NCBI RefSeq assembly: GCF_947568905.1
Contig: NC_079164.1
Span: forward strand, 36,146,001-36,210,000
Reading direction: 5' to 3'
DNA length: 64,000 nt
Source: Ostrea edulis
Taxonomy: Eukaryota
Notes under the pieces: generated by a model
What the model was told of the DNA's origin: nothing
Database searches by the model: none
The model's input: the letters and a program-made list of their open reading frames with translations, nothing else
Position numbers and translations under genes: made by a program
In this document: piece by piece, positions 15,862 to 53,995 of the stretch
Numbering within the stretch: the stretch's first letter is position 1
Layout of the letters: each line of letters starts with the position of its first letter

Positions 15862-18800
15862 CTGCAATTAAATGAAATTGAAAATTAAAATTCATAAAAC
15901 CAAAAAAAATATTAAGAACATCATAAGAATACTTTTGTGATTTAGTGACCTTAAAAGTAGGTCCTGTGTCACAGTAGGCATAAGCATGTTAACTTATTAC
16001 TACCGCCTCGAGTGCCACACATACTGTAGATTCCTATATATATCCAAGGAATTTAAAATATTGCGTATTATCGCGAGAAACATCTTGCGATTTGACATCT
16101 AAGAGTCATTTCGCGATATCAAGTACATGTGTAAAATAAGGAATTTACAGTACAGCAAAAGCAGCACTTTATCTACAGCTTGTGATGTGTTTATTTGAAT
16201 GAAACATAAATCAACATACAAACAAACAAAACAAAAATCTCAGCTAGTGTGAAAATAAGCATTTTGAATATCTACTCAACTGGGTACAAGATTGCACCTA
16301 TTTTACCCTTCCATTTTTATAACCTGAGTATAAATACAAGTAACATTTACAGCAACATCATTCTGCAGGTCAAAATGAATATAGAATGACTAAATTACTA
16401 ACAAAAAACACCATCATGCATGTATTTACCAAATAATTTACAGAAGTCCGCGTGGAATTTATAGTACAGGTACCTTAGAGTACAATCCATGACATAGCTC
16501 CCACAAAGCATGCTCCAGGAATAAGATCTCCTAGAACACAATCCAGTACAAAGCTCTAACAAAGCAATCTCAAGGAAATACTAGTAGCTCTCTTATAAAA
16601 CACTCCAGTATACAGCTTCCAACAAGAGGTACTTATGCTCATTAAGAATATCCTCTGCTTACCCCAATCTCCCAAAGGGTGTTGTTAATAGGTATAGATT
16701 ACCTCTTTCCTGAGTGTAAAAAAGAAAGGGCATGACAAAACCTTGGGTAGTCTCTTCTCTAGGGAGAAATGGATAAGAGATGAAACCATATTACTACTTC
16801 GATGTCCAGTGCACTTGACCTTTGACCTTTTGACCCCAAATTCGATAGGGAACATCCTCGTCCCATGGGTAGTTCATATGTATGACAGTAGGTGGAAAGG
16901 ATAACGCTTTAGAGCCTGGAAACCATTGTGTCTACAGATGGACGGACAGACAGACAGACAAACGGACAACCTGATTCCAGTACACCCTCCCACAATTTTG
17001 TTGCAGGGGTATAAAAATCATAATCCAGAACATTATAGCTCTCTTAGAACACACTCCAGGAGATAGCTCTCTTATGACAAAACTCCTACAGAACACACTC
17101 CTACAAAACACATTCCTACAGAACACACTCCTACACAACACACTCCTACAGAACACACTCCTACACAACACACTCCTACAGAACACACACACCTACACAA
17201 CACACTCCTACAGAACACACTCCTACAGAACACTCTACTACACAACACACCCCTACAGAACACACTCCTACAGAACACACTACTACAGAACACACTCCTA
17301 CAGAACACACACACCTACACAACACACTCCTACAGAACACACTCCTACAGAACACACTCCTACAAAACACACTCCTACAGAACACACTCCTACACAACAC
17401 ACTCCTACAGAACACACTCCTACAGAACACACTCCTACACAACACACTCCTACACAACACACTCCTACACAACACACTCATACAGAACAAACACACCTAC
17501 ACAACACACACCTACACAACACACTCCTACACAACACACTCCTACAGAACACACTCCTACACAACACACTCCTACAGAACACACTCCTACACAACACACT
17601 CCTAAAGAACACACTCCTACAGTACACACCCCTACAGAACAAACTCCTACAGAACACACTCCTACAGAACACACACCTACAGAACACACTACAGAACACA
17701 CTCCTACAGAACACACTCCTACAGAACACACTCCTACACAACACACTCCTACACAACACACTCCTACACAACACACTCCTACAGAACACACTCCTACACA
17801 ACAAACTCCTACAGAACACTCTTACAGAACAGACTCCTACACAACACACTCCTACAGAACACACTCCTACAAAACAAACTCCTACAGAACACACTACATA
17901 ACACACTCCTACAGAACACACTCCTACACAACACACTCCTACAGAACACTCCTACATAACACACTCCTACAGAACACACTCCTACAGAACACACTCCAGA
18001 ACACATTCCTACAGAACACTCTTACAGAACACATTCCTACACAACACACTCCTACAGAACACACTCCTACAGAACACATTCCTACACAACACACTCCTAC
18101 ACAATACACTCCTACAGGACACATTCCTATAGAACACATTCCTACACAACACACTCCTACACAACACACTCCTACAGAACACACTCCTACAGAACACTCC
18201 TACATAACACACTCCTACACAACACACTCCTACAGAACCCACTACAGAACCCACTCCTACAGAACACACTCCTACAGAACAAACTCCAGAACACATTCCT
18301 ACAGAACACACTCCTACAGAACACTCTTACAGAACACATTCCTACACAACACACTCCTACAGAACACACTCCTACATAACACATTCCTATAGAACACATT
18401 CCTACACAACACACTCCTACACAATACACTCCTACAGGACACATTCCTATAGAACACATTCCTACACAACACACTCCTACAGAACACACTCCTACAGAAC
18501 ACACTCCTACAGAACACACTCCTACACAACACACTCCTACACAACACATTCCTACAGAACACACTCCTACACAACAAACTCCTACAGAACAGACTCCTAC
18601 ACAACACACTCCTACACAACAAACTCCTACAGAACAAACTCCTACAGAACACTCTTACAGAACAGACTCCTACACAACACACTCCTACAGAACACACTCC
18701 TACAAAACAAACTCCTACAGAACACACTACATAACACACTCCTACAGAAAACACTCCTAAAGAACACACTCCTACAGAACACTCCTACACAACACACTCC

Positions 18801-21800
18801 TACACAACACACTCCTACAGAACACACTCCTACAGAACACACACCTACAGAACACACACCTACAGAACACACTCCTACAGAACACACTCCTACAGAACAC
18901 ACTCCTACAGAACACACTCCTACACAACACACTCCTACACAACAAACTCCTACAGAACACTCTTACAGAACAGACTCCTACACAACACACTCCTACAGAA
19001 CACACTCCTACACAACAAACTCCTACAGAACACACTACATAACACACTCCTACAGAACACACTCCTACACAACACACTCCTACAGAACACTCCTACATAA
19101 CACACTCCTACACAACACACTCCTACAGAACACACTCCTACAGAACACACTCCTACACAACACACTCCTACAGAACACACTCCTACAGAACACACTCCTA
19201 CAGAACACACTCCAGAACACATTCCTACAGAACACTCTTACAGAACACATTCCTACACAACACACTCCTACAGAACACACTCCTACAGAACACATTCCTA
19301 CACAACACACTCCTACACAATACACTCCTACAGGACACATTCCTATAGAACACATTCCTACACAACACACTCCTACACAACACACTCCTACAGAACACAC
19401 TCCTACAGAACACTCCTACATAACACACTCCTACACAACACACTCCTACAGAACCCACTACAGAACCCACTCCTACAGAACACACTCCTACAGAACAAAC
19501 TCCAGAACACATTCCTACAGAACACACTCCTACAGAACACTCTTACAGAACACATTCCTACACAACACACTCCTACAGAACACACTCCTACATAACACAT
19601 TCCTATAGAACACATTCCTACACAACACACTCCTACACAATACACTCCTACAGGACACATTCCTATAGAACACATTCCTACACAACACACTCCTACAGAA
19701 CACACTCCTACAGAACACACTCCTACAGAACACACTCATACACAACACACCCCTACACAACACACCCCTACACAACACACTCCTACACAACACACTCCTA
19801 CACAACACACTCCTACACAACACACTCCTACAGAACACACTCCTACACAACACACTCCTACACAACACATTCCTACAGAACACACTCCTACACAACAAAC
19901 TCCTACAGAACACTCTTACAGAACAGACTCCTACACAACACACTCCTACACAACAAACTCCTACAGAACAAACTCCTACAGAACACTCTTACAGAACAGA
20001 CTCCTACACAACACACTCCTACAGAACACACTCCTACAAAACAAACTCCTACAGAACACACTACATAACACACTCCTACAGAAAACACTCCTACAGAACA
20101 CACTCCTACAGAACACTCCTACAGAACACACTCCTACACAACACACTCCTACAGAACACACTCCTACAGAACACACTCCTACAGAACACACTCCAGAACA
20201 CATTCCTACAGAACACACTCCTACAGAACACTCTTACAGAACACATTCCTACAGAACACACTCCTACAGAACACACTCCTACAGAACACATTCCTACACA
20301 ACACACTCCTACACAATACACTCCTACAGGACACATTCCTATAGAACACATTCCTACACAACACACTCCTACACAACACACTCCTACAGAACCCACTCCT
20401 ACAGAACACTCCTACAGAACACACTCCTACACAACACACTCCTACAGAACCCACTACAGAACACACTCCTACAGAACACACTCCTACAGAACAAACTCCA
20501 GAACACATTCCTACAGAACACACTCCTACAGAACACTCTTACAGAACACATTCCTACACAACACACTCCTACAGAACACACTCCTACAGAACACATTCCT
20601 ATAGAACACATTCCTACACAACACACTCCTACACAATACACTCCTACAGGACACATTCCTATAGAACACATTCCTACACAACACACTTCTACAGAACACA
20701 CTCCTACAGAACACACTCCTACACAACACACCCCTACACAACACACCCCTACACAACACACTCCTACACAACACACTCCTACAGAACACACTCATACACA
20801 ACACACCCCTACAGAACACACTCCTACACAACACACTCCTACAGGACACATTCCTACAGGACACATTCCTACAGGACACATTCCTACACAACACACTCCT
20901 ACACAACACACCCCTACACAACACACCCCTACAGAACACACTCCTACAGAACACACTCCTACACAACACACTCCTACAGGACACATTCCTACACAACACA
21001 CTCCTACACAACACACTCCTACACAACACATTCCTACACAACACACTCATACAGAACACACTCATACACAACACACTCCTACAGAACACACTCCTACACA
21101 ACACACTCCTACAGAACACACTCATACACAACACACCCCTACAGAACACACTCCTACAGGACACATTCCTGCAGAACACTCTACAGAACACACTCCGATA
21201 GAACATGTCTGATATATCATGAGTGCATGTTGTAGGCCTAAGTTACCTCTAAAAAGTAATCCAAAAAGAAGTTGATGACTGCAATTCCAAGGTATACACA
21301 TCTGTAGGGGATTGAAGGAGCTGGCTTCATTTCAAAGAATTCTGCTACTTCATCGGTTGGGTAGATGTTCAGCCACACGGTCATGGCAATGCATACAAAC
21401 AAGTTAGCCAAAAAAAAATCTGAAAAAGAAAAGTCGATATTCATCATTCTGACAATAAAAGAGAGAATGTGATAATATATGAAATTTAATGAAAATTTTA
21501 CCATTAGTACATGCAGTGATAGTAAGTTGGCAAATTTGCCAACCTTAAACAATTTCAGAGTATGTGATTTGTTTGCTAAAAGTGGATTTGACTTTTCTAA
21601 TGTTTATAAGGATTAAGAAATTCCAGAAATTGAGAAAAGGGCATGAAAGGGGAAGGAGGGGGGGGGATATGATGATTTTGCAGATTAAAGAATAAAGATC
21701 CTATGATGAATTCAAGTTAGCTTAAAGTCTTGATGGAGGTGAGGGATTTCTGAATGATATTACAAAAAGATGACTTTAAAATGTGTTTCCATTTAAGGCT

Positions 21801-24800
21801 AGCACTTTGTAAAAGATAGCTCTCATTTCAAACTGATTATAACTTTCTTACAGACTTACAGTTTGTGAATATGGTTTTTCGATAAGGCCTTCCTTTGGAA
21901 AACACAATTGCCAGTGTGATGTATTGATACATCGAGATGACGTAAACTGCCATGTTCTCGTAACTTGTGTAGTCATCGTCCTCATTAATCTTATAGGGAA
22001 CAAACCTGTCAATCAAACAAGATTACTGAAGGTCATTCCAAACCGTATTATTCATTTTGGGACCAAGGAAGGGAAAACTAGCTATAGATTTATAGCTCTC
22101 TGGGAAAATATTGGGACAGACATTTTCCCAGAGATCTACAGCTACCCTAAAACTTGCTTTGAAATTAAACAGGAAACTATGTCCTACTGCACAAAGTTTG
22201 TAACATTTTCCTATTGAAGGTAAAAACATTGGAAATGTAAATATATATCATATCCACCAACTCAACAACAAATTTACACAAACAGAATCTGTAGTTTCAA
22301 ATTACGGATAAAATCAGGGCCGAATTATGTTTGTGACCCTAGTTCTTTTTGCAAACATTGCAGAATTATATGAAAATAATTGCCTTGTAAATAAAAACAA
22401 ATCTGCAGAACTTTTCCCCAGATTCTGAAGATGGAAGAAAAGTATTAATGATGCACAACTACACTGCTTAACACCTATGGAAGACTGGCTTAAAAATCAT
22501 ATAAAGAATATTCCTCCATTTTAAGTTTAGTTAATATACTAAGGTATGTATAGTGACAGTAAAACACTCATAGTGTACCTCCTGCTCCAGCGTAAAACAG
22601 TTCTTTATAACCAAACCTTGTTGTATACAATATTATTTTTGTTATTCTTCTCTCATAAAGGAATAACTATCACTTCGTAATAAGCATAAATTCATTATAA
22701 ACGTGTTTGTTATAAGTGTGTTTTACTATATGTGTAATGGAGGTTGAGTAATACCATGGCTGGTCCTGGACATTGAAATAACAGAAGACCTGAGCTGCAG
22801 TCTGTATTCCCATATGGAGTAGAATGGATAAGACGGGAGCGACACTGAAGAGACTAACCAGGGGCGGGTCCTTGGACAAACTGTCGTACGCGTTAGTGTA
22901 TCCAACTGTAATCAAACAAAACTTCATTACAAGGGTGCAGCCTGGAATAGCATGATGAAGCATGTAAAACACAACATAGACAATGTGCAAGTCAAAAATC
23001 AAAATACTTCATTATACACAAATCATGATTCTTTCTATCTTACAAGTACAGTAAAACACACTTACAGTGAACAAGATTATAATGAATTCATGCTTGCAGC
23101 GAAGTTATTTTCATTCCTTGTGGTTTTACAACATATTTTGAACTTAAAAGTGATAATGAATTATGTTTATATTCAATCAAAGTTGACTTCATTATAAGTG
23201 GGTTTTACTGTATCATATTTTGCTGTTGGGGAAGAGGCCAATTTATCTGCAGTTCAGATGAGATTTTTTCACTGCTGTGCTTACCGCAATTCACCTTTGA
23301 ATTAGAACGCTTTATCCAATATAGTATTGCGTTGTGTGACGACACAATTGAATGAGATGATTGAACAGTTTGAATGACATGTTTGGTGTAATACAATAAG
23401 AGTTTTCATTGGCCGATTACAGTCTGCCCACTTTCTCAAGCGGATTCAGCTGATCAGATAAGATGGACGGACTAGAAAATTACTAGGCCTAGCATGCTTA
23501 CATGGTATAGTTTAATTGTGTGTGACTTACATGTGAGTGTACTCGGGTGTAGTTTAATTGTGTGTGACTTACATGTGAGTGTACTCGGGTGTAGTTTAAT
23601 TGTGTGTGACTTACATGTGAGTGTACTCGGGTATAGTTTAATTGTGTGTGACTTACATGTGAGTGTACTCGGGTGCAGTTTAATTGTGTGTGACTTACAC
23701 GTGAGTGTACTCGGGTATAGTTTAATTGTGTGTGACTTACATGTGAGTGTACTTGAGTGTAGTTTAATTGTGTGTGACTTACATGTGAGTGTACTTGGGT
23801 ATAGTTTAATTGTGTGTGACTTACATGTCAGTGTATTCGGGTGTAGTTTAATTGTGTGTGACTTACATGTGAGTGTACTCGGGTGTAGTTTAATTGTGTG
23901 TGACTTACACGTGAGTGTACTCGGGTGTAGTTTAATTGTGTGTGACTTACACGTGAGTGTACTCGGGTGTAGTTTAATTGTGTGTGACTTACATGTGAGT
24001 GTACTCAGATATAGTTTAATTGTGTGTGACTTACATGTGAGTGTACTTGGGTGTAGTTTAATTGTGTGTGACTTACACGTGAGTGTACTCGGGTATAGTT
24101 TAATTGTGTGTGACTTACATGTGAGTGTACTTGGGTATAGTTTAATTGTGTGTGACTTACATGTCAGTGTATTCGGGTGTAGTTTAATTGTGTGTGACTT
24201 ACATGTCAGTGTACTCGGGTGTAGTTTAATTGTGTGTGACTTACACGTGAGTGTACTCGGGTGTAGTTTAATTGTGTGTGACTTACACGTGAGTGTACTC
24301 GGGTGTAGTTTAATTGTGTGTGACTTACATGTGACACTGAGCGATGTCAACAGGAACAAATCTATGTATAGGAACTCGAAGTCTGTCAGGTTGGCAAATA
24401 TCTGTCAAAATCACAAACAATTATAATATCGCTACTGCTAGACATCATACGGAAAATAAAATAAAACGTTTCAAAGATGTTTTCTCTAAGACATATTCCT
24501 CTTTTTCAATATTCATGATTAAAAAAAAAATTGGCAAGAGATGAATAAGTTTTAACTAAAATTCATTGTATATTCTTTCAAAACTTATCAAATATTCAAG
24601 TATAACTTAAAGAATCACAAACTATATAGATTAATTTCAACCAACAAAACAAGCAAAACATTGTAAACTGACCCAATAGAGAATTAAGACGGTGACAAAT
24701 TGAGTCAAACTGTAGCAGGCCATGTACTTAAAAATTCCGAACGAAGTCACCAGAGCTCCTCGGCCTTGTCTACAAGAGAGACCCATCATTCAGTGCGGTA

Positions 24801-27227
24801 TACTATTTGTACACTAGAGAAAATCTCACAGTGGATATATCCATAGTTCAATCAATAGTTGACAACTAACAGATGGATGCAGAATTTACCTGATAAGTGT
24901 TGGGACACATTCAATGTTGGGTTGTTTTGACGTAAATGGAGATGCCACAGAAGCCTCTGCCTCGGACAGTGAAATTCCAGCGTGTGCCGTCTTGAGGGCC
25001 CCACAGTCATTAGCCCCATCCCCACACATCCCGACAAAGTACCTAGGACAGAGAGGTGACAGGTGACAATTAAACTGTGACACAGACCAGAGTCTCTTTG
25101 TAATCGTTATTTCCCATTCATGAAATAAATTAATGGGAACATACACGTGTAACACACTTCAATGACTGATTTTCTTGTTCTGAATATCTCCGATTTTCAC
25201 ATAAACAAAATTGTAACAGATGATTTACCCTAACTCCTGCAGAACTTCTATTAATTGTGATTTCTGGTCAGGTGACATTCTAGCGAACACCGTCCCTCGT
25301 ACACAGATCTAGAAAGGAAATTTCTGCAGCGTATTTGATACAATGGTGTTTCATCATAACCTACATTATCAACAAGATGTATTTGTGAGACATATTATGC
25401 TCCTGGGTGTGTCTGTGTTCATGCATGCAATTTGCTTCAATGACCTTGACCTTCACAAGTCCATCACTTTGATTTTTCATCATAAATTAACATGCTATAT
25501 ATACCACAAAGCAGGTGTTTCTGAGTTTATATGTTTGAAACTTTTAAGAATTCAGTCTATCTATGACATACCTTCTGCAGTATCAGGGGGAAATGTTTTC
25601 TGATGATGGCCCATGTCTTTCCATCCATAGCAAAGTGGTAGTAGGAATCTGTATGGAAATCAAAGGGCATGCTAATTTTCGTCTCTTTCTGTAATGGAAA
25701 CAAGATGTGTTTGTGAAACACTGATGCCACTGGATTACAACAAAGTGGAACTGTAAGACATTGTATCCCTCTTTTTGAAAATTTCCAAAACTAGGTCAAT
25801 GGTCAATATTACGCTCACAAGGTCAACAAATCTGGTATCGTTGAAAAGGTTTTCTCACAAAAAAATGCACATGCTTAATATAAAAACAGTACCTCTTACA
25901 ATTTGGAAGATATGGCTTATATTCAAATTTCTATAAGCAGGTTAAATGTAAAGGTCACCAGGTCAAGGATTTTGTCAATGGAAAGGAATGCACATACAAA
26001 AATTGAAAGGTCTACCTCTTATGGTGTAAAAGATATAACCAAGGTTAAAGTTGTTTGAAAATTTCCAAAAACTAGGTCAAAGGTCAAGGTCACAATGTCA
26101 ACACCTAGTATCATTGGAAAGTCATCTCACAAAGAATTCAGATGCTAAACATAAAAGCAGTACCTCTTACGATTGAAAGATATGGCTTATACTTGAATTT
26201 TTTAAAAGTAGGTCAAAAGTCAATGTTAAGTTACCAAGTCAAAAAGTTTGGTGTCAGTGGAAAGGTTCTTGACACAAGAAATACACATACGAAATATGAA
26301 AGCTCTACCTCTTATAGTGTAAAAGATATGACCAAGGTCAGAGTTTTTTACCACACAGACAGACAGGCCAAAAACTAAATGCCCCTGAATCTTTTATTAC
26401 AGGGGCATAAAAAAAACACATGATACATACACATATCAACTTAATAAAGATATGGTTTGTGTACATTTTAACCTACTAACAAAATGTTACATAACTCACA
26501 GTAGATTTGTCATGGCCATGGTCGTCCGGATCTTCCGTATACATGTACTCCAGCCACGGGTCCTTCTTACCAGGAGTTCCGGGAAAGGCCTGGACTAGGA
26601 TGATCCTCTGATTTTCGCCGACCATCCCACATTCCCGAGCCACACTCAGAGCTGTTAACATGTTGTCTCCTGAAACAGAAACAACTTTCACAATTCCCTC
26701 CTCTCCAATCAACAATGATAATTTCCTTCTTTAAACAAGAGGCCCAAGGGCCACATCGCTCACCTGAGTCACCTTGGCTCATATTTAAAAATTTTCCCTA
26801 TATATTTGTGTGCAAAACTTTGATCCCCCCTTGTGACCCCATCCTACCCCTGGGGGGGCCATGATTTTAACAAACTGAAATTTGTAATATGTCGGAAAGC
26901 TTTCATGTAAATCTCAGCTTTTCTGGCTCCGTGGTTCTTGAGAAGAAGATTTTTAAAGATTTATCCTTTATATTATGTAAAACTTTGATCCCCTATTGTG
27001 GCCCCATCCAACCCCCGGGGGGGCATGATTTGAACAAACTTGAATCTGCATTATGTCAGGAAGCTTTCATGTAAATTTCAGCTTTTCTGGCTCAGTGGTT
27101 CTTGAGAAGAAGATTTTTAAATGACCCCACCATATTTTTGCATTTTTGTAATTATCTCCCCTTTGAAAGGGACATGGCCCTTCATTTGAACAAACTTGAA
27201 AGCCCTTTACCCAAGGATGCTTTGTGG

Positions 27228-27258
<31 letters not shown>

Positions 27259-27299
27259 TGAGAGGAAGTTGAAAATGTGATAAGTTTATGACGACGACA

Positions 27300-27336
<37 letters not shown>

Positions 27337-30300
27337 ACCTTTGGCTCAGGTGAGCTAAAAACATTTCCTGACCAATCTGAGCATGGTAAAACATGCTTAC
27401 AGTAAAGTGATTCTCATTCCCTGTAGTTTTAAATCATATCATAAACTTACTGAATATAACATTAAAATTGTTTGTCCCCAGCACTTCACTATAAGTGTGT
27501 TTTACTGTAATTGTTTGTCCCCAGCACTTCACTATAAGTGTGTTTTACTGTAATTGTTCGTCCCCAGCACTTCATTATAAGTGTGTTTTACTGTAATTGT
27601 TTGTCCCCAGCACTTCACTATAAGTGTGTTTTACTGTAATTGTTTGTCCCCAGCACTTCACTATAAGTATGTTTTACTGTAATTGTTTGTCCCCAGCACT
27701 TCACTATAAGCGTTTTTTGCTGTAATTGTTTGTCCCCCAGCACTTTACTATAAGCGTGTTTTACTGTAATTGTTTGTCCCCCAGCACTTTACTATAAGCG
27801 TGTTTTACTGTAATTGTTTGTCCCCCAGCTCTTCACTATAAGTGTGTTTTACTGTAATTGTTTGTCCCCAGCACTTCACTATAAGCATGTTTTACTGTAA
27901 TTGTTTGTCCCCAGCACTTCACTATAAGCGTGTTTTGCTGTAATTGTTTGTCCCCCAGCACTTTACTATAAGCGTGTTTTACTGTAATTGTTTGTCCCCA
28001 GCACTTCACTATAAGCGTGATTTGCTGTAATTGTTTGTCCCCCAGCACTTTACTATAAGCGTGTTTTACTGTAATTGTTTGTCCCCAGCACTTCACTATA
28101 AGTGTGTTTTACTGTAATTGTTTGTCCCCAGTACTTCACTATAAGTGTGTTTTACTGTATATGACACTAAAATCAAACATTCCTATTAATGTTTCAAAGA
28201 GCACAAAAATCCAGTATCAGTTGTAAGTCAGTTAATGTAGAAGTCACATCAGTTATAAGTCAGTTAATGTAGAAGTCACATCAGTTATAAGTCAGTTAAA
28301 GTAGAAGTCACATCAGTTATAAGTCAGTTAATGTAGAAGTCACATCAGTTGTAAGTCAGTTAATGTAGAAGTCACATCAGTTGTAAGTCAGTTAATGTAG
28401 AAGTCACATCAGTTGTAAGTCAGTTAATGTAGAAGTCACATCAGCTGTAAGTCAGTTAATGTAGAAGTCACATCAGTTGTAAGTCAGTTAATGTAGAAGT
28501 CACATCAGTTATAAGTCAGTTAATGTAGAAGTCACATCAGTTGTAAGTCAGTTAATGTCCTCTTTTATTACAATGTGAATGCTTTTAGGTAAAATTATAC
28601 CCCATGTTCAGCAGCCTGACAGTATATAAAACAAGAAATGCTAACATAGCACACCTGTTACCATGACAGTCCTGATGTTGGCGTCCAGAAGCTTGTGAAT
28701 GATGGGAGTAGTTTCTGGTTTCAGCCTGTTCTCCATCACCAAGAATCCAAGGAAAGTCAGGTTCCTCTCTACTTGCTCTCTGAGTAGCCAATAAAAAAAA
28801 ATGTCTTTAATACTAACATTTGATGACGTTAGTGCTGGAACAGTGAACTTTACTCACAACATGTTAGTAAAGATTGTGAATAAATGTGATTGTGACCACC
28901 ATTAAAGACCTCTTATCTTGTAAAGATATTCATTCTCATTCTGATGCAACTTGCAGTATTTCACTTGATATTGACCACTAAACAGTTGCATGATGGTATA
29001 GTCATAAAATATGTTCCAAAATATTTACATTAGACATTTTGTTCATAGCTCAATCTTTTATAACCTTATGATTTAAATCTTTTCATCTCGTTCATGCAAC
29101 TGCCTAAAACCGCAGTGCAGATGCAGTTTATACAGCAGTCTCATTAGTATGAGAAAAAAATCACCTGTGTGGAACAAATTAGTTATCTTTGAAATTACAT
29201 TTTTTATTTTCCAACAAGATACTTAAACTTCTATGAAAAAATATAGCTTAAAGGTCTGATAATGCCCCTGGATTGGTCTGATAACACCCCCTGGATTGAT
29301 GTGGTAACACCTCCTGGATTGATGTGAAAATGCCCCCTGGATTGATGTGATAACACCCCCTGGATTGATGTGATAATGCCCCCTGGATTGATGTGATAAC
29401 ACCCCCTGGATTGATGTGATAATGCCCCCTGGATTGATGTGATAACACCCCCTGGATTGATGTGATAACAACCCCTGGATTGATGTGATAACACCCCCTG
29501 GATTGATGTGATAATGCCCCCTGGATTGATGTGATAACCCCTGGATTGATGTGATAACACCCCCTGGATTGATGTGATAACACCCCCTGGATTGATGTGA
29601 TAATGCCCCCTGGATTGGTGTGATAATAACCCCTGGATTGATGTGATAATGCCCCCTGGATTGGTGTGATAACACCCCCTGGATTGGTCTGATAACACCC
29701 CCTGGATTGATGTGATAATAACCCCTGGATTGGTCTGATAACACCCCCTGGATTGATGTGATAATGCCCCCTGGATTGGTGTGATAATACCCCCTGGATT
29801 GATGTGATAACACCCCCTGGATTGATGTGATAATGCCCCTGGATTGATGTGATAATGCCCCCTGGATTGGTGTGATAACACCCCCTGGATTGATGTGATA
29901 ACGCCCCCTGGATTGATGTGATAACACCCCCTGGATTGGTCAGATAATGCCCCCTGGATTGATGTGATAATGCCCCCTGGATTGATGTGATAATAACCCC
30001 TGGATTGATGTGATAATGCCCCCTGGATTGGTGTGATAACACCCCCTGGATTGATGTGATAATGCCCCCTGGATTGATGTGATAACACCCCCTGGATTGG
30101 TCAGATAATGCCCCCTGGATTGATGTGATAATGCCCCCTGGATTGGTGTGATAATAACCCCTGGATTGGTCTGATAATGCCCCCTGGATTGGTCTGATAA
30201 TGGCCCTTGAATTGATTCAGCAATACTTGCCTTTGGATCCTCTGTATTTTTGTGTACTTTAGTTTTGTTGGAAAAGATCTATAAGCAAGGGCAATAACTC

Positions 30301-33300
30301 TGTACCCATGTTTGGTGTAATTTATAAGAACCTCATGGAAATTGCTTGGGACTGAAATAAAAGTTGCAGAAAGAGTACGTATTACAATACAGATCAATTA
30401 AAGAGAAGAGAACTTCACGCAGAATTTATAGAAAAGGTCTTTACCGGTCTCTGGTTTAGAAAGAGAGGCAATCATCTCTGGAGCTCCTTTAGTGAAGAGT
30501 TCAAAGTTGGGAGCTCCGAGTTTTCTTGTGATGACAGACATCCGTTGTAGGCTGGAGGTAAACGTGAATTGTCTCATGATGGCTATTTCATCATGCATTG
30601 GCTGGGAAATAAAAACATCAAAACAAATGTGAACAGTCTCATGATGGCTATCTCATCATGCATTGGCTAGGAAATAAAAACATCAAAACATATACTTATA
30701 TGTATGGAGCGCCAAATTAACATAAACTCAAATAATTGAAGATATCTTCAATTATTTGAAGATATCATCAATTCATTTGATGCGTGCAACAATTTAATTA
30801 AAGATCTCTTCAAATAATTAATGATATCTTCAATTCTGAATTATTGCGCGCATTAATTGAATTGATGATAACATTAATTCTTCAGCTGAATTGTTGCGCG
30901 CTTTAATTGAATTAATGATCTCTTCCAAATGAATTAATGATATCAACAATTGAATTGATGCGTGCTACAATTCAATTGAAGAGAGCAATAATTGATATAA
31001 TGCGCGCATTAAATCAATTGATGAGAGCAATAATTGAATTGATGTGCGCATTAATTCATTTGATGAGAGCAATAATTGATTTAATGCGCGCATTAATTCA
31101 ATCATTGCTCTCTTCAATTGAATTAATGATATCTTTAATTCATTTGAAGAGAGCAATAATTCTTTTAGAGAGAGCAACTATATAATTAAAGATATCTTCA
31201 ATTCAACATATCCAGAATTGAATTAATGATCTCTTTAATTGAATTGTTGCTTTCTTTAAAAGAATTGATGCGCGCATTAATTCCTTATACAAAAGCATTG
31301 TAAATGATTTAAAGATATCTTCAATTGAATTAAAGAGATCATCAAATTATTTATACCGAGCTCTAAATTAATTATTGCGAGCAATAATTCTACTAAATTG
31401 ATGCTCTCATCAAATGAATTGAAGAGAGCAATAATTAAATTAATGCACGCATCAAATCTATCATTGCTCTCATTAATTCAATTAATGCACGCATCAATTG
31501 AATTGAAGAGAGCAATAATTGAATTAATGCACACATTAAATCAATTATTGCTCTCATTAATTCAATTGATGAGAGCAATAATTGAATTGAAGTGCACATT
31601 AATTCAATTGATGAGAGCAATAATTGATTTAATGCGCGCATTAATTCAATTAAAGAGGGCAATAATTGAGATATCTTCAATTATTTGAGTTTATGTTAAA
31701 TTGGCGCTCCATATATATGCACTAAGATATAGGTGATGTACAGCTGTATTGGTAGAATGTCACACAAAATTTATCCCTTTCTCTGAAAAATTAAATTTGC
31801 ATATTGTGACCTTTCATGACTGCATCATATTAATTTTCCAATTTTAAGTCACAGTATGAAAATTTAAATGACCTGGTACTGAAAAAACCAATTCAACCAC
31901 TCAAAACAGACTTTAGATTATTGAGGGAATATGCTCTCTTGAATTTGATAATTGAGCTAGAAGACTATTATCAGGTCATCAGCCTCTCTATCAGATCTTC
32001 AGCCTCTCTATCAAATCTTCAGCCTCTCTATCAGATCATCAGCCACTCTATCAGTTCTGACCTTGAACTCTTCATCGAACAGCTCCTTGTTGCTGGATCT
32101 GGATCCTTTTGGTCTGACTATGGTAGGGACAATCATGTCATATCTACTGGTCTCTTCCTCTCCAGGTTCCTCCAATTCCTGTAACAACCGTTCAAATACA
32201 GATACAGTCAAACAACCTACAGGGACATTCAAACTAGTTTTATTATCGTTAAATCTTAATTCAATACATCCTCATCTTCATTAGCCAGGAATTGGAGAGA
32301 AGAGGGGTGGAACATAAACCCTTGCTTAGTGAAAATCCCAAAGTTGACACACCGTGTTCTAGTTTGGATAAAATGCTCTATCTGCAATGTCTCGATCCAC
32401 CCAGAAAACTGTGACCAGATGAGCTAGTTAGCCATCAGATCACTCTCATCCTCTTCATGACCATGAAAACCAGAATAAGCACCATCCCTAATTGTGAGCC
32501 TTGTGGCTCCAGAAGGATTTCATTCACAAATCAATCAAGCTTGTAATTTTATTCAATTTACTTGTCTTCATATACAGAATTTTTTAAAACTCTTTTAATT
32601 ATAAGCAAATATCTTCAAGAGATACACATGTATATACATGTACAATGTGTATATATACATGACATATCTTTTTGTGGTGACTCTGTTGTTTACATACCCA
32701 ATTTGTGGCATCAAACATAATAAGATCTAGTGGGTCGCCACTGAGCACTCCATCAATGATGGTCAGAGAGTGACAGGCGGTCATGACATGCAGTAGGTGG
32801 GCCTGGTCATGTGGGAGGGCCTTGATGTCGTGAAGCTCCTCAGTAAACCTGTATAACATCAAGGGGAATTCATAAATAATGTGCTACAACAATTCCAATA
32901 GCATCTCTATTAGGCTGATAATGGAAATTTTTAAATAGAATTTTGGTAAAACTTTACTTTAAATATCTATTACTTAAATTTTGGAAAATCAGTGGCAGTA
33001 CTTGAAGTTGAGAAATATAGTCCATATTCAAACTGCACATCATGATTTTTATTTTGATTAAAACTTTATCCTAATACCGATGCATGCTGACATCTGAGAT
33101 TCAAGTTTCAGCATACATCTGCTGAATTATCCTTCATTATCTTAACAATAAGTATGGTAAAAAATCAGCATTAATTCTAAAACCTAAGAACATGTTTACT
33201 ACTTGAAAATTTTACTTAGCAAATTAAGAATTGAGTCCAAAATGTGGAGGTAAATACTCTTAGTATGGAAAAATAATCTGGAGTTCTGAATACTCTCCAA

Positions 33301-36300
33301 AACTTAGAATAAAGCAGAGATGACTCAGCAATATGGGGAAGATGAGGGAGGCATCATTTCTTTTCACATTGCAAATATATTGGGGATAGGGAGTGTGTGT
33401 TAAGGTACGTTCAAAGAGCTGTTGATATGCAAATCAATTAGTGACGGAACTTTATGTCAATAATGCTAGTCAGTAATTTTTAATTCTCTGGTTTATTTTC
33501 TGACAATTTTCCTTGCCTAAACTTAGTGGTTTATTCCAAATACACTGTATATTTAAAAGGGTAAAAATGAAAATGTAAACCCTACAAGCCATCTTGTACT
33601 CCAACAATACTCTGCATGTTGAGGCCATCCTCTGTCAAAGTGCCCGTCTGTAATAAAACACGATACTGACATGATTCTTAAAAGATAACCACAGACTGAA
33701 TTTGTATTAGGATGGTTCAGAAAAACGTGTTTATTATGAACTCACACTTATCATGAAGTATTATTTATTTCCCTACAAGGGGAAAGTAGCAAATATTTTA
33801 TTGGATATAACAAAGTTTAGTTATAAAGAACTATGTCTAATAAATAGGTTGATATACTGAAGTTGCCACATATTATGTTGGTTGTCAAGTAAAATTAAGA
33901 AACTTCTAGTTACGTATTATCTTACCTTATCAAAGCAAACAGCATTGATGGTTCCACTGACATTAATACTTCGAGGACTGATGCAGTAAATCTGACTTTT
34001 CTTCAGACGTCTCTGAGCAAATACAATCCCAATGGTCAGAGCAGCTGGCAGAGCGGGCGGCACGGCTATCGTGATCAAGTCCATGGAACGAAGGAAAATA
34101 TCTGCAAATGCCTCAGACTCTTGCACCTGAAATATTGTCAAGACTTTTTGTATTCCAACTTAAGGTTCACTGTCCCTCTGAAAAGGATGATAACTCTTCA
34201 TATGGATCCATGGCAGTAATTCCTTCCTATGCATGTGACAAAAGAGAGTTGGGCAAACACGGACCCCTGGACACACTAGAGGTGGGATCGGGTGCCTAGG
34301 AGGAGTAAGCATCCCCTGTGACATTGCACATTAAGTTAAGCACTGTTGAATGAGGCACGATACACATTTGTGACATTGCACATTAAGTCAAGCAGTGTTG
34401 AATGAGGCACGATACACATTTGTGACATTGCACATTAAGTCAAGCAGTGTTGAATGAGGCACGATACACATTTGTGACATTGCACATTAAGTCAAGCACT
34501 GTTGAATGAGGCACGATACACATTTGTGACATTGCACATTAAGTTAAGCACTGTTGAACGAGGCACGATACACATTTGTGACATTGCACATTAAGTCAAA
34601 CACTGTCGAACGAGGCACAATACATATTTGTGACATTGCACATTAAGTCAAGCACTGTCGAACGATGCCTGATACTCTTTTTCCCGATTAGAGTGACCTA
34701 CCCCTGAATTCAAAATTATTCTGTGCTCTTTATCTACTAACGATGACTAAATGTATGCATTGATGGTCAAGAAGTATGGGTGTTGTTTGATTAATTGTGC
34801 TAATGTGTGTTTCATATATGCCATTGATCTTTTCAAAATTCATATTTTTCTGTAAATGAACAATGGCGCCATACTTTTATTTAAGTGGTTCTTTATGGTA
34901 TGAATGGAACGTCAGCCATTTTGTTTTGTAATAGACCTCCTTAATTCAGTGTATATTAATGGACAGAATCACAATAACATTAAAGAGTTCCATGACAGGG
35001 ACCAATATCACATTGTGGTCACAGATTATAAAAAATAACATGCAAATAGACTATATTCACATTTTCTTAATTCTAATGTATAAAAGTAATATATTAACTG
35101 ATCAGATTAAAATCTTCTATTCCACTCGTCATTTAGATCTATATGGAGGTGCGGCCCCATGTTTGACTACATACCATCAATACTACTGTGTAAATGAATC
35201 CGACCCCTGCAATGGCTGCCAGTATGCCGACAAATATGTATGTGTCCCTATTGAATTTAAAGTCCACAGGTTTTGGGAACATGATGGAACGCACCAGTTC
35301 TCCTTTTGCTGTTGAAAATCCTTTAATAAAAAAAAAAGAAAGAAATACATCTGTCATGATATCACTAAATCTTAAATGAAAGCTAACAGTTCCAGATAAT
35401 TACTTTATATCAATACAATAAAACACTCTCACAGCATACAGTTATAAATAGGTGTTATAGACGGCTAGTCCACCATCCTGTACCACAGCATACTGTTAAC
35501 TCACTGGATATAACAAATTACTTATAACATATATCAAAACTATTTGTCCTTCCCACTTTGCTATAAACATGTCTTACTGTAATTGAATTATGTTGATCAG
35601 AAAGACAAGCTTGTCGAGCTTTACCTGTCCGCAGAACCACAGCCTTAACATGCTGGGAGCCATAAAACCTGGTCTGTAAGATGTGTGTGCCACAAAACAG
35701 AACGTGTTTCGCGTGATCCTTCAGGTTGAACAAGATATCCTCCTGTGACTTGGACATTTTAGGGTTGGGTAATGGAGTTTTAGTCACTGGTACACTTTCT
35801 CCTGTAATCAAAATTCGAATTTTACAAGTACGCGGTCTACTCTTCTCACATTAAAGTCCCTTATATTGAACTATCTGTTATACTAAAGTTGCTTATATTA
35901 AATTGAACTATCTGTAATATTGAAGTCGCTTATATTGAACTATCTGTTATATTGAAGTTCATGCTTATATTGAACTATCTATTATATTGAAGTCACTTAT
36001 ATTGAACTATCTGTTATAATGAAGTCGCTTGTATTGAACTATCTGTTATATTGAAGTAATTTATATTGAACTATCTGTTATATTGAAGTCACTTATATTG
36101 AACTATCTGTTATATTGAAGTCATTTATTTTGAACTATCTGTTATAATGAAGTCACTTGTATTGAACTATCTGTAATATTGAAGTCGCTTGTATTGAAAT
36201 TATCTGTTATAATGAAGTCATGCACTTATATTGAACTATCTGTTATATTGAAGTCACTTATATTGAAGTCACTTATATTGAACTATCTGTTATATTGAAG

Positions 36301-37464
36301 TCACTTATATTGAACTATCTGTTATATTGAAGTCACTTATATTAGCAACAACCACGCTCGCTAGGTGGCGCGTCATGTTCTATTTTTATTTCTACAGGAA
36401 AAGTGGGACGAGGTTACACCCTATTTTTTACGGGCTAGTATGGATAAACCTAGAGCCTACGAATGATGCGAAGTTGATCGTTCGGATCTAAAATAGCTAT
36501 ATTTAGCGTATCTCACGTGATTAGGCAGATTCCAGAAAATCCCTTTGAGATTGAAGCGATTAAGTAGAGCGAGTATATGTAAACATTTACTTAACGGTGA
36601 AATACGCAACAAAGAGTGACATATTAATACATTTTATGCATGAATAAATTATACTGAGGTCAAACATGGACGATAATTGCCCGTGTTCATATAGTATTTG
36701 ATTAATTTAGATATCCAAGGAAAGATAACTCCCATTATTAACGTACTCACAACAAACCGGTGGTATACAATAATACAATGTTTCTGAATGATGAGTGAAT
36801 CTTTATTTTCATCAGAATCTTTTCCATCACACTCGCAGACCAGGTCCCCATACCCCTACCAGTGTCAAACTGTGACTGATAGCAGTGCGGTATTTAATTT
36901 GATATAGTCTAGAGGAAATTCGAAATATGGTAGTGACATTTCTTCCTCACTGAATTAGCTGGATTTTTAACGTTTAAAGAAAAGTGGGGTATGGACTGGG
37001 GGGTTAAAAATGCTATTTGCCAAATTTTCAACAATATTAATTACAAGGCAAGGCAAAAGGGGTCATTAGCTACAGATGATGCAATTTTCACTTGCAAGTT
37101 GCACTGCCACTAGTTACACTTAATTAGTGACTTACTTACAGAGAAATAAAGTAACTTACAAATATTTTATTTATTTATTTATCTATCATTTCATTTCATT
37201 TTTTTTAATATCATGGTTTGTAGAAGAATCATCGCAATAAAGGGACATTAATTATTAGTGTTACAAAAAAATCTGATCATGCAGTTTTTAAATTTCTGAA
37301 TTTTGAAAAAATAAATAAATAATAGATTCTGATACCACTCAGCCCCCCCACCCCCCGACTGGCCAGAGAGTTCTGCTTCTGTCAGTTCTGATGCAACTAG
37401 CTCAGCCCCCAGACTGGCCAGAGAGTCCACTGTTTCGGTAAATTCTGATAATGATGCAACTCAG

Positions 37465-37498
<34 letters not shown>

Positions 37499-40400
37499 AC
37501 AGCTCTACCAGAAGTTCTCGGAAAAGACTTGCTGATGTTTAATAAATCAGTTTTCCTATTAATTTTACTTTTGCTCCTGTTCATCAGTTCATTAGGCTAT
37601 GGCCCAATCTGATTAAATTTAAGATCGTTGATCCGCTCCGTGTTCCACTTCCTTTCCTGTATCTGTGAAGTCCAGAGGTGAGATATATTCTTTCCAAAAC
37701 AACTAAGAATGTTCATGGAACAATTTAGTATTAATTGTTTTCCATTTATGTTGTATGCCTTATTTCAAGAAATAACTTTCAGATCACTTTTTAATGTGAA
37801 ATGGAACATTTTCAATTTTTGACAACCTGACGGTAGGGGTGTTTAAGACACTATACCTCATTTTCTGTAAGGAAGTGGAGTAAAAAGAATTCAGAATTGG
37901 ATTCAGCATACCCAAAATTGGTAATTACACCTGCTTTTTATTGTTTTGGATAATGGTGTTTCAAGAAATAAAGTTGGGTCACTTTTTGATGCGAAATGAA
38001 ACATTTTCTGTTTTTGGCAACCTGACGGTAGGGGTGTTTAAGACACTATACCTCATTTTCTATAAGAAATTGGAGTAAAAGGAATCCAGATTTGAAATCA
38101 GCATACTCAAAATTGGTAATTACACCTGATTTTTATTGTTTTGGGTAATTTTTAAAAAATGGGTGGTGGTTGCTACTTATATTGAACTATCTGTTATAAT
38201 GAAGTCACTTATATTGAACTATCTGTTATATTGAAGTCACTTATATTGAAGTCACTTATATTGAAGTCACTTATATTGAACTATCTGTTATATTGAAGTC
38301 ACTTATATTGAACTATCTGTTATAATGAAGTCACTTATATTGAACTATCTGTTATAATGAAGTCACTTATATTGAACTATCTGTAATATTGAAGTCACTT
38401 GTATTGAACTATCTGTAACACTGAAGTGAAAATAAATCCACAGTAACATTATTCATAATGTTCAGCATCAGTTATATTCAATTTTGGATATGATGAACAA
38501 TTCAAGTTGATCCCCTGAATTTCAATATATCCTGAGTATGTATATGCAGATGAGTATATTGTATACATTCGACTGAAAAATCACAAATATAAAATCTAAT
38601 GCAGTTTAATAGTGATCCATGAGGTATTAGAATTAGACCATCACCTGTGAGCATACTCTCATTAATGATACAGTTTCCTGTCAGAAGCACGGCGTCACAC
38701 TGCATGAAACAGCCATTCCGTGGGATAGAAATAATGTCGCCAGGCACCAGATCATCCGAATTCACGTCTACATAAGCTGAAAACAGCATCAATTTTTCTA
38801 ATGAGCTGTACTCTTTAATTACCTTATACATTTAGGTATCTAATAGATTCAATATCAGAAAGTTCTCTTGGGGAGAAGAAAATTCTATGATTTAAATAAA
38901 AATAATCTTACTATCTCCACTTAGTCTGGACACGATTGTCGATGATTCTATGGTGTCTCTTAATGCTCTTTGCATCTACAACAAAGCAGATTTTAACAGT
39001 TTGTCCAAATGAACAGTCATGTTTTGACACAAATTTTCAACAAGTGCCTGCAAACAAAACCCAGCCATTTAGCTGTTGTGTCTAAAGTTGTTTGATCTAG
39101 TATACAGAAGTGACTAGAACTTTTTCTTTTGCTTTTATCTATTCTTAATATTCTCAAGTCAAAAATAAATTTCCATTTCACTCTGAAGTCAATGTTGACA
39201 GATCTATAAGATAATTGTTTGAGAATTTTAAGTTTTAACTCAGGTAAACTTTTACCATACTCAAACTCAAACTTTTTTGTTTTGAGTACAACTCAGGTGA
39301 AATAGTTAATACCAGGCATGGAGGTTATAAAACTTTGTAGTCAAACTCTAACATGTTTGTTTTGAGTACAACTCTGAGCAAGCTCCAAAGCATACTCAAA
39401 AAATCTTGAGAATGTACTCAATTTGAGAATGAGAATGATTTTATAAAAGTTTTATAACCCTGACTTTTGAATATGAGTAAAAAAAATTCCCTCTTTATAA
39501 GCTGTCTAAATTGGAATAAACTTATCTTATCTTCTCTAAATGATATAGAACACAGAGTTTGAGTTTGAGTATGAAGATGTGCTCAAAAAAGTTTTATAAC
39601 CTCCAGGACAGGTGTTATTCTATTGCACTTATTTATTCAGTCATTAATTCAATAATCACAAATCACAAATAAATAAATGTGAAATCATTAACATTTAGGG
39701 GTTGGGTTGGATTTGTGAATTGCCAAGTGTTTACACTGTTGGGAGAATGTGATTGTGTGGATTTGGTTTACACTGTTGGGAGAATGTGATTGTGTGGATA
39801 TGGTTTACATTGTTGAGGGAATGTAATTGTGTGGATACGGTTTATACTGTTGGGAGAATGTGATTGTGTGGATATGGTTTACACTGTTGGGAGAATGTAA
39901 TTGTGTGGATATGGTTTACACTGTTGGGAGAATGTGATTGTGTGGATATGGTTTACACTTTTGGGAAAATGTGATTGTGTGGATATGGTTTACACTGTTG
40001 GGAGAATGTGATTGTGTGGATACGGTTTACACTGTTGGGAGAATGTAATTGTGTGGATATGGTTTACACTGTTGGGAGAATGTGATTGTGTGGATATGGT
40101 TTACACTGTTGGGGGACTTTGATTGTGTGGATATGGTTTACACTGTTGGGAGAATGTGATTGTGTGGATACGGTTTACACTGTTGGGGAAATTTGATTGT
40201 GTGGATATGGTTTACACTGTTGGGAGAATGTGATTGTGTGGATACGGTTTACACTGTTGGGGGAATTTGATTGTGTGGGTATGGTTTACACTGTTTGGAA
40301 AATGTAATTGTGTGGATATGGTTTACACTGTTGGGAGAATGTAATTGTGTGGATATGGTTTACACTGTTGGGAGAATGTGATTGTGTGGATATGGTTTAT

Positions 40401-52782: not shown

Positions 52783-53995
52783 TGGCTCATATTTAAAGAT
52801 TTTTCCTAGTATATATTCGCATGTAAAACTTTGATCCCTATTGTGGCCCCAACCTACTCCCTGGGGCCATGATTTTTACAAAATTGAATCTGCACTATGT
52901 CAGGAAGCCTTCATGTAAATGTAAAATTTTCTGGCCCAGTGATTTTTCAGAGGAAGATTTTTAATGATTTTCCCCAATATACTTGTATGTAAAATTTTGA
53001 TCCCCTACTGTGGCCCCATCTTACCCCCGGGGACCATGATTTTTACAAATGTGAATCAGCACTAAGTCAGGAAGCTTTTGTGCAAATGTAAACTTCTTTG
53101 GCCCAATGGTTCTTAAGGAGAACATTTTTAAAGATTTTTTTTCTATTTATTAGTTATGTAAAACTTTGATCCCCTATTGTGGCCCCATCCAACACCCAGG
53201 GGCAATGATTTTAACAAACTTGAATCTGCACTATGTCAGGAAGCTTGTATGTAAATCTCAGCTTTTCTGGCTCAGTGGTTCTTGAGAAGAAGATTTTTCC
53301 TATATGTAAAACTTTGATCCCCTATTGTTGCCTCATCTTACCCCCCCCCCCTTGGGGGAGGGCATGATTTTAACAAACATGAATCTCTACTATGTCAGGA
53401 AGCTTTCATGTAAATTTCCATTTTCCTGGCCCAGTAGTTTTTGAGAAGATTTTTAAAGATTTTCCCTATATATTTGTATGTAAAACTTTGATCCCCTATT
53501 GTGCCCCCATCCTAGTGCTATGGGGCCATGATATTAAAAAACTTGAATCTGTACTATGTCAGGAAGCTTTCATGTAAATCTCAGCTTTTCTGGCTAAGTG
53601 GTTCTTGAGAAGAAGATTTTTAAAGATTTTCCCTATATATTTATATGTAAAACTTTGATCCCCTATTGTGGCCCCATCCTACCCCCGAGGGCCATGATTT
53701 TTACTAACTTGAATCTGCATTATGTAAGGAAGCTGTCATGTAAATTTCAGCTCTTCTGGTGGAGTGGTTCTTGAGAAGAAGATTTTTAAATGACCTCACC
53801 CTATTTTTGCATTTTTTGTGATTATCTTCCCCTTTGAAAGGGGCATGGCCCTTTATTTGAAAAAAAACTTGAAAGCCCTTCATCCAAGAATGCTTTTGGC
53901 CAAGTTTGGTTATAATTGGCCCAGTGGTTCTGGAGAAGAAGTCAAAAATGTAAAAAGTTTACAGACAGACGATGGGCAACAGGCGATCAGAAAAA

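What the first reader, a model, noticed from the sequence alone, without database searches (positions are those of the whole stretch)
23494..24401. A real 5' splice site amplified 20 times in frame: a potential 'ladder' exon extension in a P5B ATPase
The first unit of this 42-bp minisatellite straddles the exon 26/intron junction. On the minus strand every unit regenerates AC(A/G)T|GTAAGT, the same strong donor in the same phase (42 = 14 codons). The exon's frame stays open through the whole array (ORF 23472..24359: ...TSLSV-[[14 protein letters not shown]]x19-...). Any of the 19 downstream donors would join exon 27 in frame and insert n x 14 basic, His/Cys-containing residues right after TM6, with no premature stop to trigger NMD. 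Copy-number variation would change the number of possible isoforms. The structure is directly visible; use of the extra donors is inference.
Basis: partly seen in the sequence, partly recalled or inferred. Interest (0 to 1): 0.72.

Follow-up and report, generated by a model that had tools for sequence, protein, structure and literature searches.

The report
Splice-donor minisatellite in oyster ATPase intron
An intron of a flat-oyster polyamine-pump gene begins with 20 head-to-tail copies of its own splice signal, a repeat type already known from human and lancelet genes, and every annotated transcript uses only the first copy, so the proposed ladder of longer proteins is possible on paper but has no support here.

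Summary
A 42-bp array (23504..24334, 19.8 copies, 94% match, no indels) starts 6 nt inside a 73-nt exon. On the minus strand it repeats ACRT|GTAAGT 20 times at exactly 42-nt spacing, and the exon's reading frame stays open through it.

The gene is Ostrea edulis "polyamine-transporting ATPase 13A3-like", a P5B ATPase.

All four RefSeq isoforms join ...SLSVT|FGYTNAY, which is the first donor. Two Saccostrea orthologues and a third oyster product known only from Logan contigs read the same. The two Saccostrea orthologues have the same donor but a short intron (108 and 267 nt) without the array.

The unit occurs nowhere else in the 895-Mb genome.

This is a splice-junction minisatellite ("mirage"), the type known from human F7, CBS, IFI6 and amphioxus. 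A paralogue 14 Mb away carries four more donor-spanning arrays, with periods 56, 44, 30 and 37.

The in-frame, stop-free property is close to chance. One period in three is a multiple of 3, and the consensus unit is open in two of three sense frames.

In known cases either no downstream copy or only the nearest one or two are used.

The scan has already reported this class in other windows of this genome.

The parts
24329..24401 (-). 73-nt coding exon ([24 protein letters not shown] plus one base). It encodes the conserved FLYIDL transmembrane segment of the P5B ATPase.
   Evidence: Exact mapping of RefSeq product P0271. Weak but specific match to P5B chain 7op3_A residues 1173-1192. 100% identical peptide in the Saccostrea orthologues.
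24323..24331 (-). Authentic 5' splice site CAT|GTAAGT. The first intron base is 24328.
   Evidence: This is the junction used by all four annotated isoforms. The paralogue has the same donor at the same position and phase, TCACAT|GTAAGT. S. cucullata has TTACAT|GTAAGT and S. echinata TTACCT|GTAAGT.
23504..24334 (-). 42-bp minisatellite of 19.8 copies. The unit is roughly the exon's end plus the first ~27 nt of the ancestral intron.
   Evidence: TRF. Units in register. All 19 matches in the 895-Mb genome at up to 3 mismatches lie in this array, with 0 control hits. The flank after the array is homologous to positions about +30 to +45 of the short S. cucullata intron.
23525..24286 (-). 19 downstream copies of the donor (pseudo-5' splice sites). 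The GT starts at 24286, 24244 ... 23530, all in phase 1. Six have G rather than A at position -2, including the two nearest the true donor.
   Evidence: None is used in any annotated isoform.
23496..23501 (-). Degenerate last site GTAAGC, 29 nt after the 20th donor and out of phase. It marks where the array runs back into ancestral intron sequence.
   Evidence: Sequence. Compared with the S. cucullata intron.
22906..23503 (-). Non-repeated remainder of the intron, with the acceptor tacag| ending at 22906.
22755..22905 (-). Next coding exon, 151 nt ((F)[19 protein letters not shown]...QDQPW).
   Evidence: Exact mapping. 84% identical in Saccostrea. 49% identical in the paralogue.

Best explanation
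This is a splice-junction minisatellite of the 'mirage' or F7-IVS7 type.

Origin (inferred). In the Ostrea lineage, after its split from Saccostrea, a short segment was duplicated in tandem and then expanded to about 20 copies by slippage or unequal exchange. The segment held the exon's end, the 5' splice site and about the first 27 nt of the intron. A 9-unit higher-order block shows in the variant pattern.

Consequence. Every unit carries the donor, so all the extra copies sit inside the intron and are removed with it. The splicing machinery takes the most upstream donor, the only one with the true exon upstream. The other 19 are silent pseudo-sites, or nearly so.

The frame. The period of 42 (14 codons) and the open frame are by-products of a unit that happens to lack stops in two of three sense frames. 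They are not a designed isoform ladder.

Shown: the anatomy, uniqueness to this locus, absence from Saccostrea, and use of the first donor in all annotated products. Inferred: the mode of origin, and the silence of the copies at the RNA level.
For: Anatomy.

Unique to this locus: 19 of 19 pattern hits lie in the array and the reversed-pattern control gives 0. The DNA search finds only this place.

Orthologous intron: 108 nt in S. cucullata and 267 nt in S. echinata, starting GTAAGTC, with no array.

Annotated products: XP_056003240.1 and three further isoforms all read ...[15 protein letters not shown].... Other oyster and bivalve products have no insertion at this junction.

Same class nearby:
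- The paralogue has donor-spanning arrays of period 56, 44, 30 and 37, and acceptor-spanning arrays of 42 and 13.
- The window gene has a 65-bp x2 duplication across an acceptor.
- The Saccostrea orthologues carry such arrays too, some at the same junctions with other periods.
- Across the two O. edulis genes there are 5 donor-spanning arrays against 1.46 expected, P = 0.016.

No preference for periods divisible by 3: 2 of 5.

No special RNA structure hiding the copies: z = -0.17.

Literature: in F7 the identical downstream sites are functional but silent, and the most upstream is chosen (PMC1557585). Amphioxus mirages do not disturb normal splicing (PMC3087553).
Against: Silence of the copies therefore rests on gene models and analogy.

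Gene annotation would miss isoforms present at a few percent.

In human IFI6 (12-nt unit) and CBS (31-nt unit) the two nearest pseudo-sites are used (PMC1557585). A 42-nt unit could behave either way.

All 20 GTAAGT copies are intact, and unit positions 1-22 never vary, while all 9 variable sites fall in positions 23-41. In the paralogue's older array, where extension would hit a stop at once, most units have lost the donor G. This contrast is compatible with the copies being visible to selection, but it rests on two arrays only.
Confidence: 0.75

Rival explanations
1. Partial ladder, as in human IFI6 or CBS. The first donor dominates, but the one or two nearest copies (24286, 24244) are used in a measurable share of transcripts. 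This would give in-frame isoforms with 14 or 28 extra residues at the end of the FLYIDL membrane helix.
For: The copies are identical in the GTAAGT core, in phase and free of stops, so such mRNAs would escape nonsense-mediated decay. IFI6 and CBS use their two nearest pseudo-sites (PMC1557585). No RNA structure masks the copies.
Against: None of the four RefSeq isoforms shows it. The two nearest copies have G rather than A at position -2, a slightly weaker match. F7 has a similar period (37 nt) and shows no use at all. The insertion would land in a conserved transmembrane/loop boundary whose sequence is continuous in all relatives seen.
Confidence: 0.2
2. Full functional ladder. Many of the 19 copies are used, and array length tunes a set of P5B isoforms with long basic His/Cys-rich inserts.
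For: Only the open frame and the phase. Variable sites are 5 synonymous to 4 non-synonymous in the exon frame, against 2 to 7 in each of the other frames.
Against: The synonymous excess is not significant. The expected synonymous fraction is 0.30-0.37, there are only 9 sites, and CpG decay accounts for three of them. H>Y, P>L, P>S and S>N changes are tolerated. There is no annotated isoform and no database protein with the peptide in the 170-540 aa range searched. The array is absent from Saccostrea. In published cases distal copies are not used.
Confidence: 0.02
3. Functional intronic element. An array of U1-binding sites helps define the very short 73-nt exon or suppresses premature cleavage within the intron, and is kept for that reason.
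For: All 20 GTAAGT copies and the following 16 nt are invariant, while the rest of the unit varies. The exon is short.
Against: Saccostrea splices the same 73-nt exon with a 108-267-nt intron and no array. Arrays of this class sit at many junctions with unrelated units and turn over between genera. The invariance rests on about 9 mutation events in a young, homogenised array.
Confidence: 0.04
4. A dispersed satellite or transposon-borne array that landed next to the donor by chance and only resembles it.
For: This gene is 30% tandem repeat, and one array on a donor is expected by chance.
Against: The unit occurs nowhere else in the genome. The array's first unit is continuous with the exon's last bases. 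Its far end runs into sequence homologous to the ancestral intron about 30 nt from the donor.
Confidence: 0.02

Closest known systems
Human F7 IVS7 37-bp VNTR (Borensztajn et al. 2006, PMC1557585)
   Same: The first unit spans the exon/intron boundary, taking the exon's last few bases (4 there, 6 here by TRF) plus the start of the intron. The authentic donor is followed by identical copies, and physiologically only the most upstream one is used. Here, likewise, all annotated products use the first.
   Different: F7 has 5-9 copies of 37 bp, not a multiple of 3. Here there are about 20 copies of 42 bp, in frame and without stops. Silence of the copies was shown by experiment in F7 and is only inferred here.
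Human IFI6 (6-16) intron-2 minisatellite, and the CBS 31-bp VNTR c.1444_1467+7(16_21) (as summarised in PMC1557585; CBS naming in PMC2630376)
   Same: Many reiterated donors (25 pseudo-sites in IFI6, 15-21 units in CBS).
   Different: Their units are shorter (12 and 31 nt). Use is documented there and not here. Even there only the two nearest copies are used, not the whole array.
Amphioxus 'mirages' (Adh3 and globin genes; Ebner et al. 2010, PMC3087553)
   Same: Minisatellite-like tandem duplications of exon/intron boundaries, on both donor and acceptor sides, recurring in many genes of one genome. They vary in length and do not disturb normal splicing.
   Different: A different phylum. The unit lengths reported there are 10-160 bp. 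In oysters the class has so far been noted only by this scan's other reports; my one literature query listed none.
Human LMNB2 (100-bp) and PDGF (81-bp) boundary minisatellites (cited in PMC1557585)
   Same: Reiterated donor, with only the authentic site used.
   Different: Longer units. Known to me only through the citing paper.

Membership tests
Splice-junction minisatellite ('mirage' / F7-IVS7 type) | Head-to-tail array whose first unit spans an exon/intron boundary | tested here: met
   The TRF array starts 6 nt inside the exon and runs 824 nt into the intron.
Splice-junction minisatellite ('mirage' / F7-IVS7 type) | The splice-site sequence is reiterated in every unit | tested here: met
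   20 of 20 units carry ACRT|GTAAGT at exact 42-nt spacing.
Splice-junction minisatellite ('mirage' / F7-IVS7 type) | Derived from the locus itself, not a dispersed repeat | tested here: met
   The unit is found only here in 895 Mb. The orthologous Saccostrea introns start with the same GTAAGTC and lack the array.
Splice-junction minisatellite ('mirage' / F7-IVS7 type) | Normal splicing uses the authentic (outermost) site | tested here: met
   All four RefSeq isoforms read SLSVT|FGYTNAY. This is evidence at the level of gene models only; no reads were examined.
Splice-junction minisatellite ('mirage' / F7-IVS7 type) | Copy number varies between alleles (VNTR) | not testable with these tools
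   Only one assembly copy of the locus exists in G000.
Multi-donor minisatellite giving in-frame protein isoforms (IFI6 type) | Unit length is a multiple of 3 and free of stops in the exon's phase | tested here: met
   42 nt; 0 stops in the exon frame across the array.
Multi-donor minisatellite giving in-frame protein isoforms (IFI6 type) | Downstream copies are used in mature mRNA | tested here: inconclusive
   No annotated isoform uses one. No database protein with the repeat peptide at 170-540 aa. No O. edulis transcript fragment was found across the junction. RNA reads were not examined.
P5B P-type ATPase (ATP13A2/3-like polyamine transporter) | P5-type N-terminal domain plus P-type ATPase core with the PPALP/DKTGT region closest to P5B | tested here: met
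   The exon at 33929..34120 matches P5B and ATP13A2 chains at E = 1.5e-16 to 6e-16, against 6.5e-05 or weaker for P5A. The annotated product carries PF12409, PF00122, PF00702 and PF13246 and is named polyamine-transporting ATPase 13A3-like.

The most novel reading that the evidence does not exclude
The nearest one or two copied donors (24286, 24244) are used in at least 1% of transcripts. The oyster P5B pump would then exist in forms with 14 or 28 extra basic residues after its sixth core membrane helix, and array length would vary among oysters. Because the extension is in frame and escapes mRNA decay, this locus would be a clean natural read-out of how an invertebrate spliceosome chooses among identical 5' splice sites.
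Probability: 0.2. Interest if true: 0.45.

Novelty: new member of a known kind. Interest (0 to 1): 0.3.

Why it matters
On its own this is one more example of a known repeat type.

Its modest value is as a test case. Twenty identical, strong donors lie in phase with no stop, so any use of the copies would be visible in mRNA rather than hidden by decay. Published cases disagree on whether near copies are used.

It also adds two genes, and their Saccostrea orthologues, to the scan's earlier notes that boundary-spanning minisatellites are unusually common in oyster genes. In these two genes the excess is 5 observed against 1.46 expected.

The array is probably a useful length-polymorphic marker in a species of conservation and aquaculture interest.

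Tried and rejected
- Repeat peptide in databases. The 309-aa read-through gave no hit. That search sees only proteins of 170-540 aa.
- Transcript fragments across the junction. Residues 905-1085 of the RefSeq product gave no O. edulis fragment; the best hit was 59% identical.
- Pfam and PDB on the two short exons alone. Pfam gave nothing. PDB gave nothing for the 49-aa exon and only a weak hit for the 24-aa exon. One call failed on my own frame error.
- Transposon or dispersed-satellite origin. Rejected.
- RNA structure masking the copies. Rejected; z = -0.17.
- Purifying selection on the repeat peptide. Not significant.
- Chance placement. It cannot be rejected for this gene alone (1 observed against 0.75 expected). 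It is rejected only when the paralogue is added.
- Spliced models. I built no spliced model of my own and sent none to a search tool. Exons were searched singly by reference, and full-length queries were database proteins.

Full report
**What is there**

On the minus strand a 73-nt exon (24401..24329) ends ...GTCACAT and is followed by GTAAGT. Tandem Repeats Finder reports one array at 23504..24334, period 42, 19.8 copies, 94% matches and no indels. GTAAGT occurs 20 times at exactly 42-nt spacing, from 24328 to 23530. It is preceded by ACAT 14 times and ACGT 6 times. A degenerate GTAAGC follows 29 nt after the last copy, out of phase.

Across the array the exon's frame has no stop. A second sense frame has only five, all in variant units. 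One antisense frame is open as well.

**The gene and the genome**

An exon at 33929..34120 matches P5B ATPases and human ATP13A2 at E of about 1e-16, far better than P5A. A search of protein representatives with that exon gave a full-length relative from Aplysia.

A word search seeded with that relative returned two Ostrea edulis RefSeq proteins. Their contig length, 112,480,954, equals that of the window's contig. P0181 maps to the window at 95-100% identity over 15 tblastn pieces (11 at 100%), and P0184 likewise (95-100%, 14 pieces) to a paralogue about 14 Mb away on the same chromosome.

The window gene is "polyamine-transporting ATPase 13A3-like". It has four isoforms, X1-X4: XP_056003240.1, XP_056003243.1, XP_056003245.1 and XP_056003247.1.

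Mapping X1 exactly onto the window resolves 29 introns. The finding's intron is the 26th of these: donor 24328, last intron base 22906, 1423 nt.

**Is the first donor the real one?**

Yes. The paralogue has the same exon end and donor (TCACAT|GTAAGT) at the same position and phase, with a 214-nt intron and no array. In Saccostrea cucullata and S. echinata the exon peptide is identical. Their donors are ACAT|GTAAGTC and ACCT|GTAAGTC, and their introns are 108 and 267 nt without an array.

The sequence just after the O. edulis array (ATGTAAGCATGCT) matches ACAGTAAAGCATGCT about 30 nt into the S. cucullata intron. The unit therefore corresponds to the exon's end plus about the first 27 nt of the ancestral intron. 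The expansion happened after Ostrea and Saccostrea split.

The unit occurs nowhere else in the 895-Mb assembly. All 19 hits at up to 3 mismatches lie in the array, and the control gives none.

**Are the copies used?**

Direct evidence could not be had. 

The indirect evidence is as follows:
- All four RefSeq isoforms read ...LLTSLSVT|FGYTNAYDS..., which is the first donor. They differ only at the N-terminus.
- Neither Saccostrea orthologue, nor a third oyster product known only from Logan contigs (P0180, a 179-member cluster), nor any other relative fetched here has an insertion at this junction.
- No protein carrying the repeat peptide was found among candidates of 170-540 aa.
- No O. edulis transcript fragment spanning the junction is in the collection.
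- An RNA fold of the exon end plus three units is no more stable than shuffled sequence, z = -0.17. Nothing obvious hides the copies.

**Is the open frame meaningful?**

Probably not.
- The five donor-spanning arrays in the two O. edulis paralogues have periods 42, 56, 44, 30 and 37. Two are divisible by 3, as chance predicts.
- The consensus unit is stop-free in two of three sense frames.
- With a phase-1 intron, GTAAGT itself cannot create a stop.
- Among the 19 full units, 25 of 798 cells differ from the consensus, at nine positions.
- In the exon's frame, five of those positions are synonymous and four are not (H>Y six times, S>N, P>L, P>S). The expected synonymous fraction is 0.30-0.37, so this is not significant. 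Three of the sites are CpG decay.

One oddity remains. All nine variable positions lie in unit positions 23-41, and positions 1-22 (the donor and the next 16 nt) never vary.

**The class it belongs to**

While looking for paralogues I found that the paralogue's next intron begins with a 30-bp array (22-24 copies, depending on the TRF run). Its first unit is the exon end plus CCATG|GTAAGAAAG. There the extension would hit TAA at once, and most units have lost the donor G.

A systematic pass then gave these counts:
- The paralogue has four donor-spanning and two acceptor-spanning arrays.
- The window gene has one donor-spanning array (this one).
- The window gene also has a 65-bp x2 duplication of an acceptor plus exon start at 30560..30690.

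Random viable placement of the observed arrays gives 1.46 donor-spanning arrays for the two genes, against 5 observed (P = 0.016). For the window gene alone it is 0.75 against 1. The Saccostrea orthologues carry such arrays too, partly at the same junctions but with different periods.

After these tests I consulted the scan's earlier notes. Four reports on other windows of this genome describe the same class and pointed me to F7 and lancelet papers. I then read those papers.

**Literature**

Borensztajn et al. 2006 (PMC1557585) describe the human F7 IVS7 37-bp VNTR.
- Its first unit spans the boundary.
- Its identical downstream sites are functional but silent.
- The most upstream site is chosen.
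- When the true site is destroyed, the next copy takes over.

Their introduction lists further cases:
- IFI6: 25 pseudo-sites, with the two nearest used constitutively.
- CBS: two pseudo-sites used.
- LMNB2 and PDGF: only the true site used.

The CBS VNTR is named c.1444_1467+7(16_21) in PMC2630376. Ebner et al. 2010 (PMC3087553) describe amphioxus "mirages" at both donor and acceptor boundaries that do not disturb normal splicing.

**Verdict**

The thing is a young, locus-specific splice-donor minisatellite of a known kind, in a genome where that kind is common. The ladder is arithmetically possible, but the gene models do not support it and chance explains the open frame.

My estimates are:
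- about 75% that the copies are silent or nearly so;
- about 20% that the nearest one or two are used at a measurable level, as in IFI6 or CBS;
- about 2% for a full functional ladder.

I built no spliced model of my own and sent none to a search tool. Exons were searched one by one by reference, and full-length queries were database proteins.

Noticed in passing
G000:C1:22270600-22312100 (loci L008-L015), paralogous P5B gene (P0273/P0184): The paralogue has four donor-spanning arrays (56 bp x2.1, 44 x3.3, 30 x22, 37 x5.9) and two acceptor-spanning arrays (42 x20.2, 13 x1.9). In the 30-bp array the nine units nearest the true donor have all lost the GT, and intact copies survive only further in.
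   Followed up: partly
window 30560-30690 (-): A 65-bp x2 duplication of an acceptor plus the first 10 codons of the exon ([10 protein letters not shown]). The annotated product needs the downstream, exon-proximal acceptor. Using the upstream copy would add 65 nt and shift the frame.
   Followed up: partly
window 30230 (donor) and 29257-30216: A GC-AG intron (AAG|GCAAGT), followed from +15 by a 23-bp x42 array. The array begins next to the donor but does not include it.
   Followed up: no
window 15862-59006 (whole gene): Tandem repeats of period 10 or more fill 13,061 of 43,345 nt (32 merged arrays). One is a 4.1-kb array of a 15-mer (17082-21205) that starts 42 nt into the last intron.
   Followed up: partly
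L016, L017, L018 (Saccostrea cucullata and S. echinata orthologues): Donor-spanning arrays occur at several junctions, some the same as in O. edulis but with other unit lengths. Examples: the 'catcag|GT' junction has 44 bp in the O. edulis paralogue, 66 bp in S. cucullata, and 88 bp in both Saccostrea orthologues of the window gene; the 'gccatg|GTAAGAAA' junction has 30 against 29 bp.
   Followed up: partly
window 23504-24334, unit positions 1-22 versus 23-41: All nine variable sites of the 42-bp unit lie in positions 23-41. The donor and the next 16 nt never vary in 20 units. This could reflect few mutation events, homogenisation or constraint, and remains unexplained.
   Followed up: partly
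window 35850-36343 and 38175-38427: The same 32-bp unit forms two separate arrays near the two ends of one 2.8-kb intron.
   Followed up: no
window about 26730-27310, 52790-53970, 62590-62760, 11790-12060; also the paralogue's introns: A dispersed repeat with a decayed ORF ([23 protein letters not shown]..) and internal tandem units of about 165 bp sits in several introns of both paralogues.
   Followed up: no
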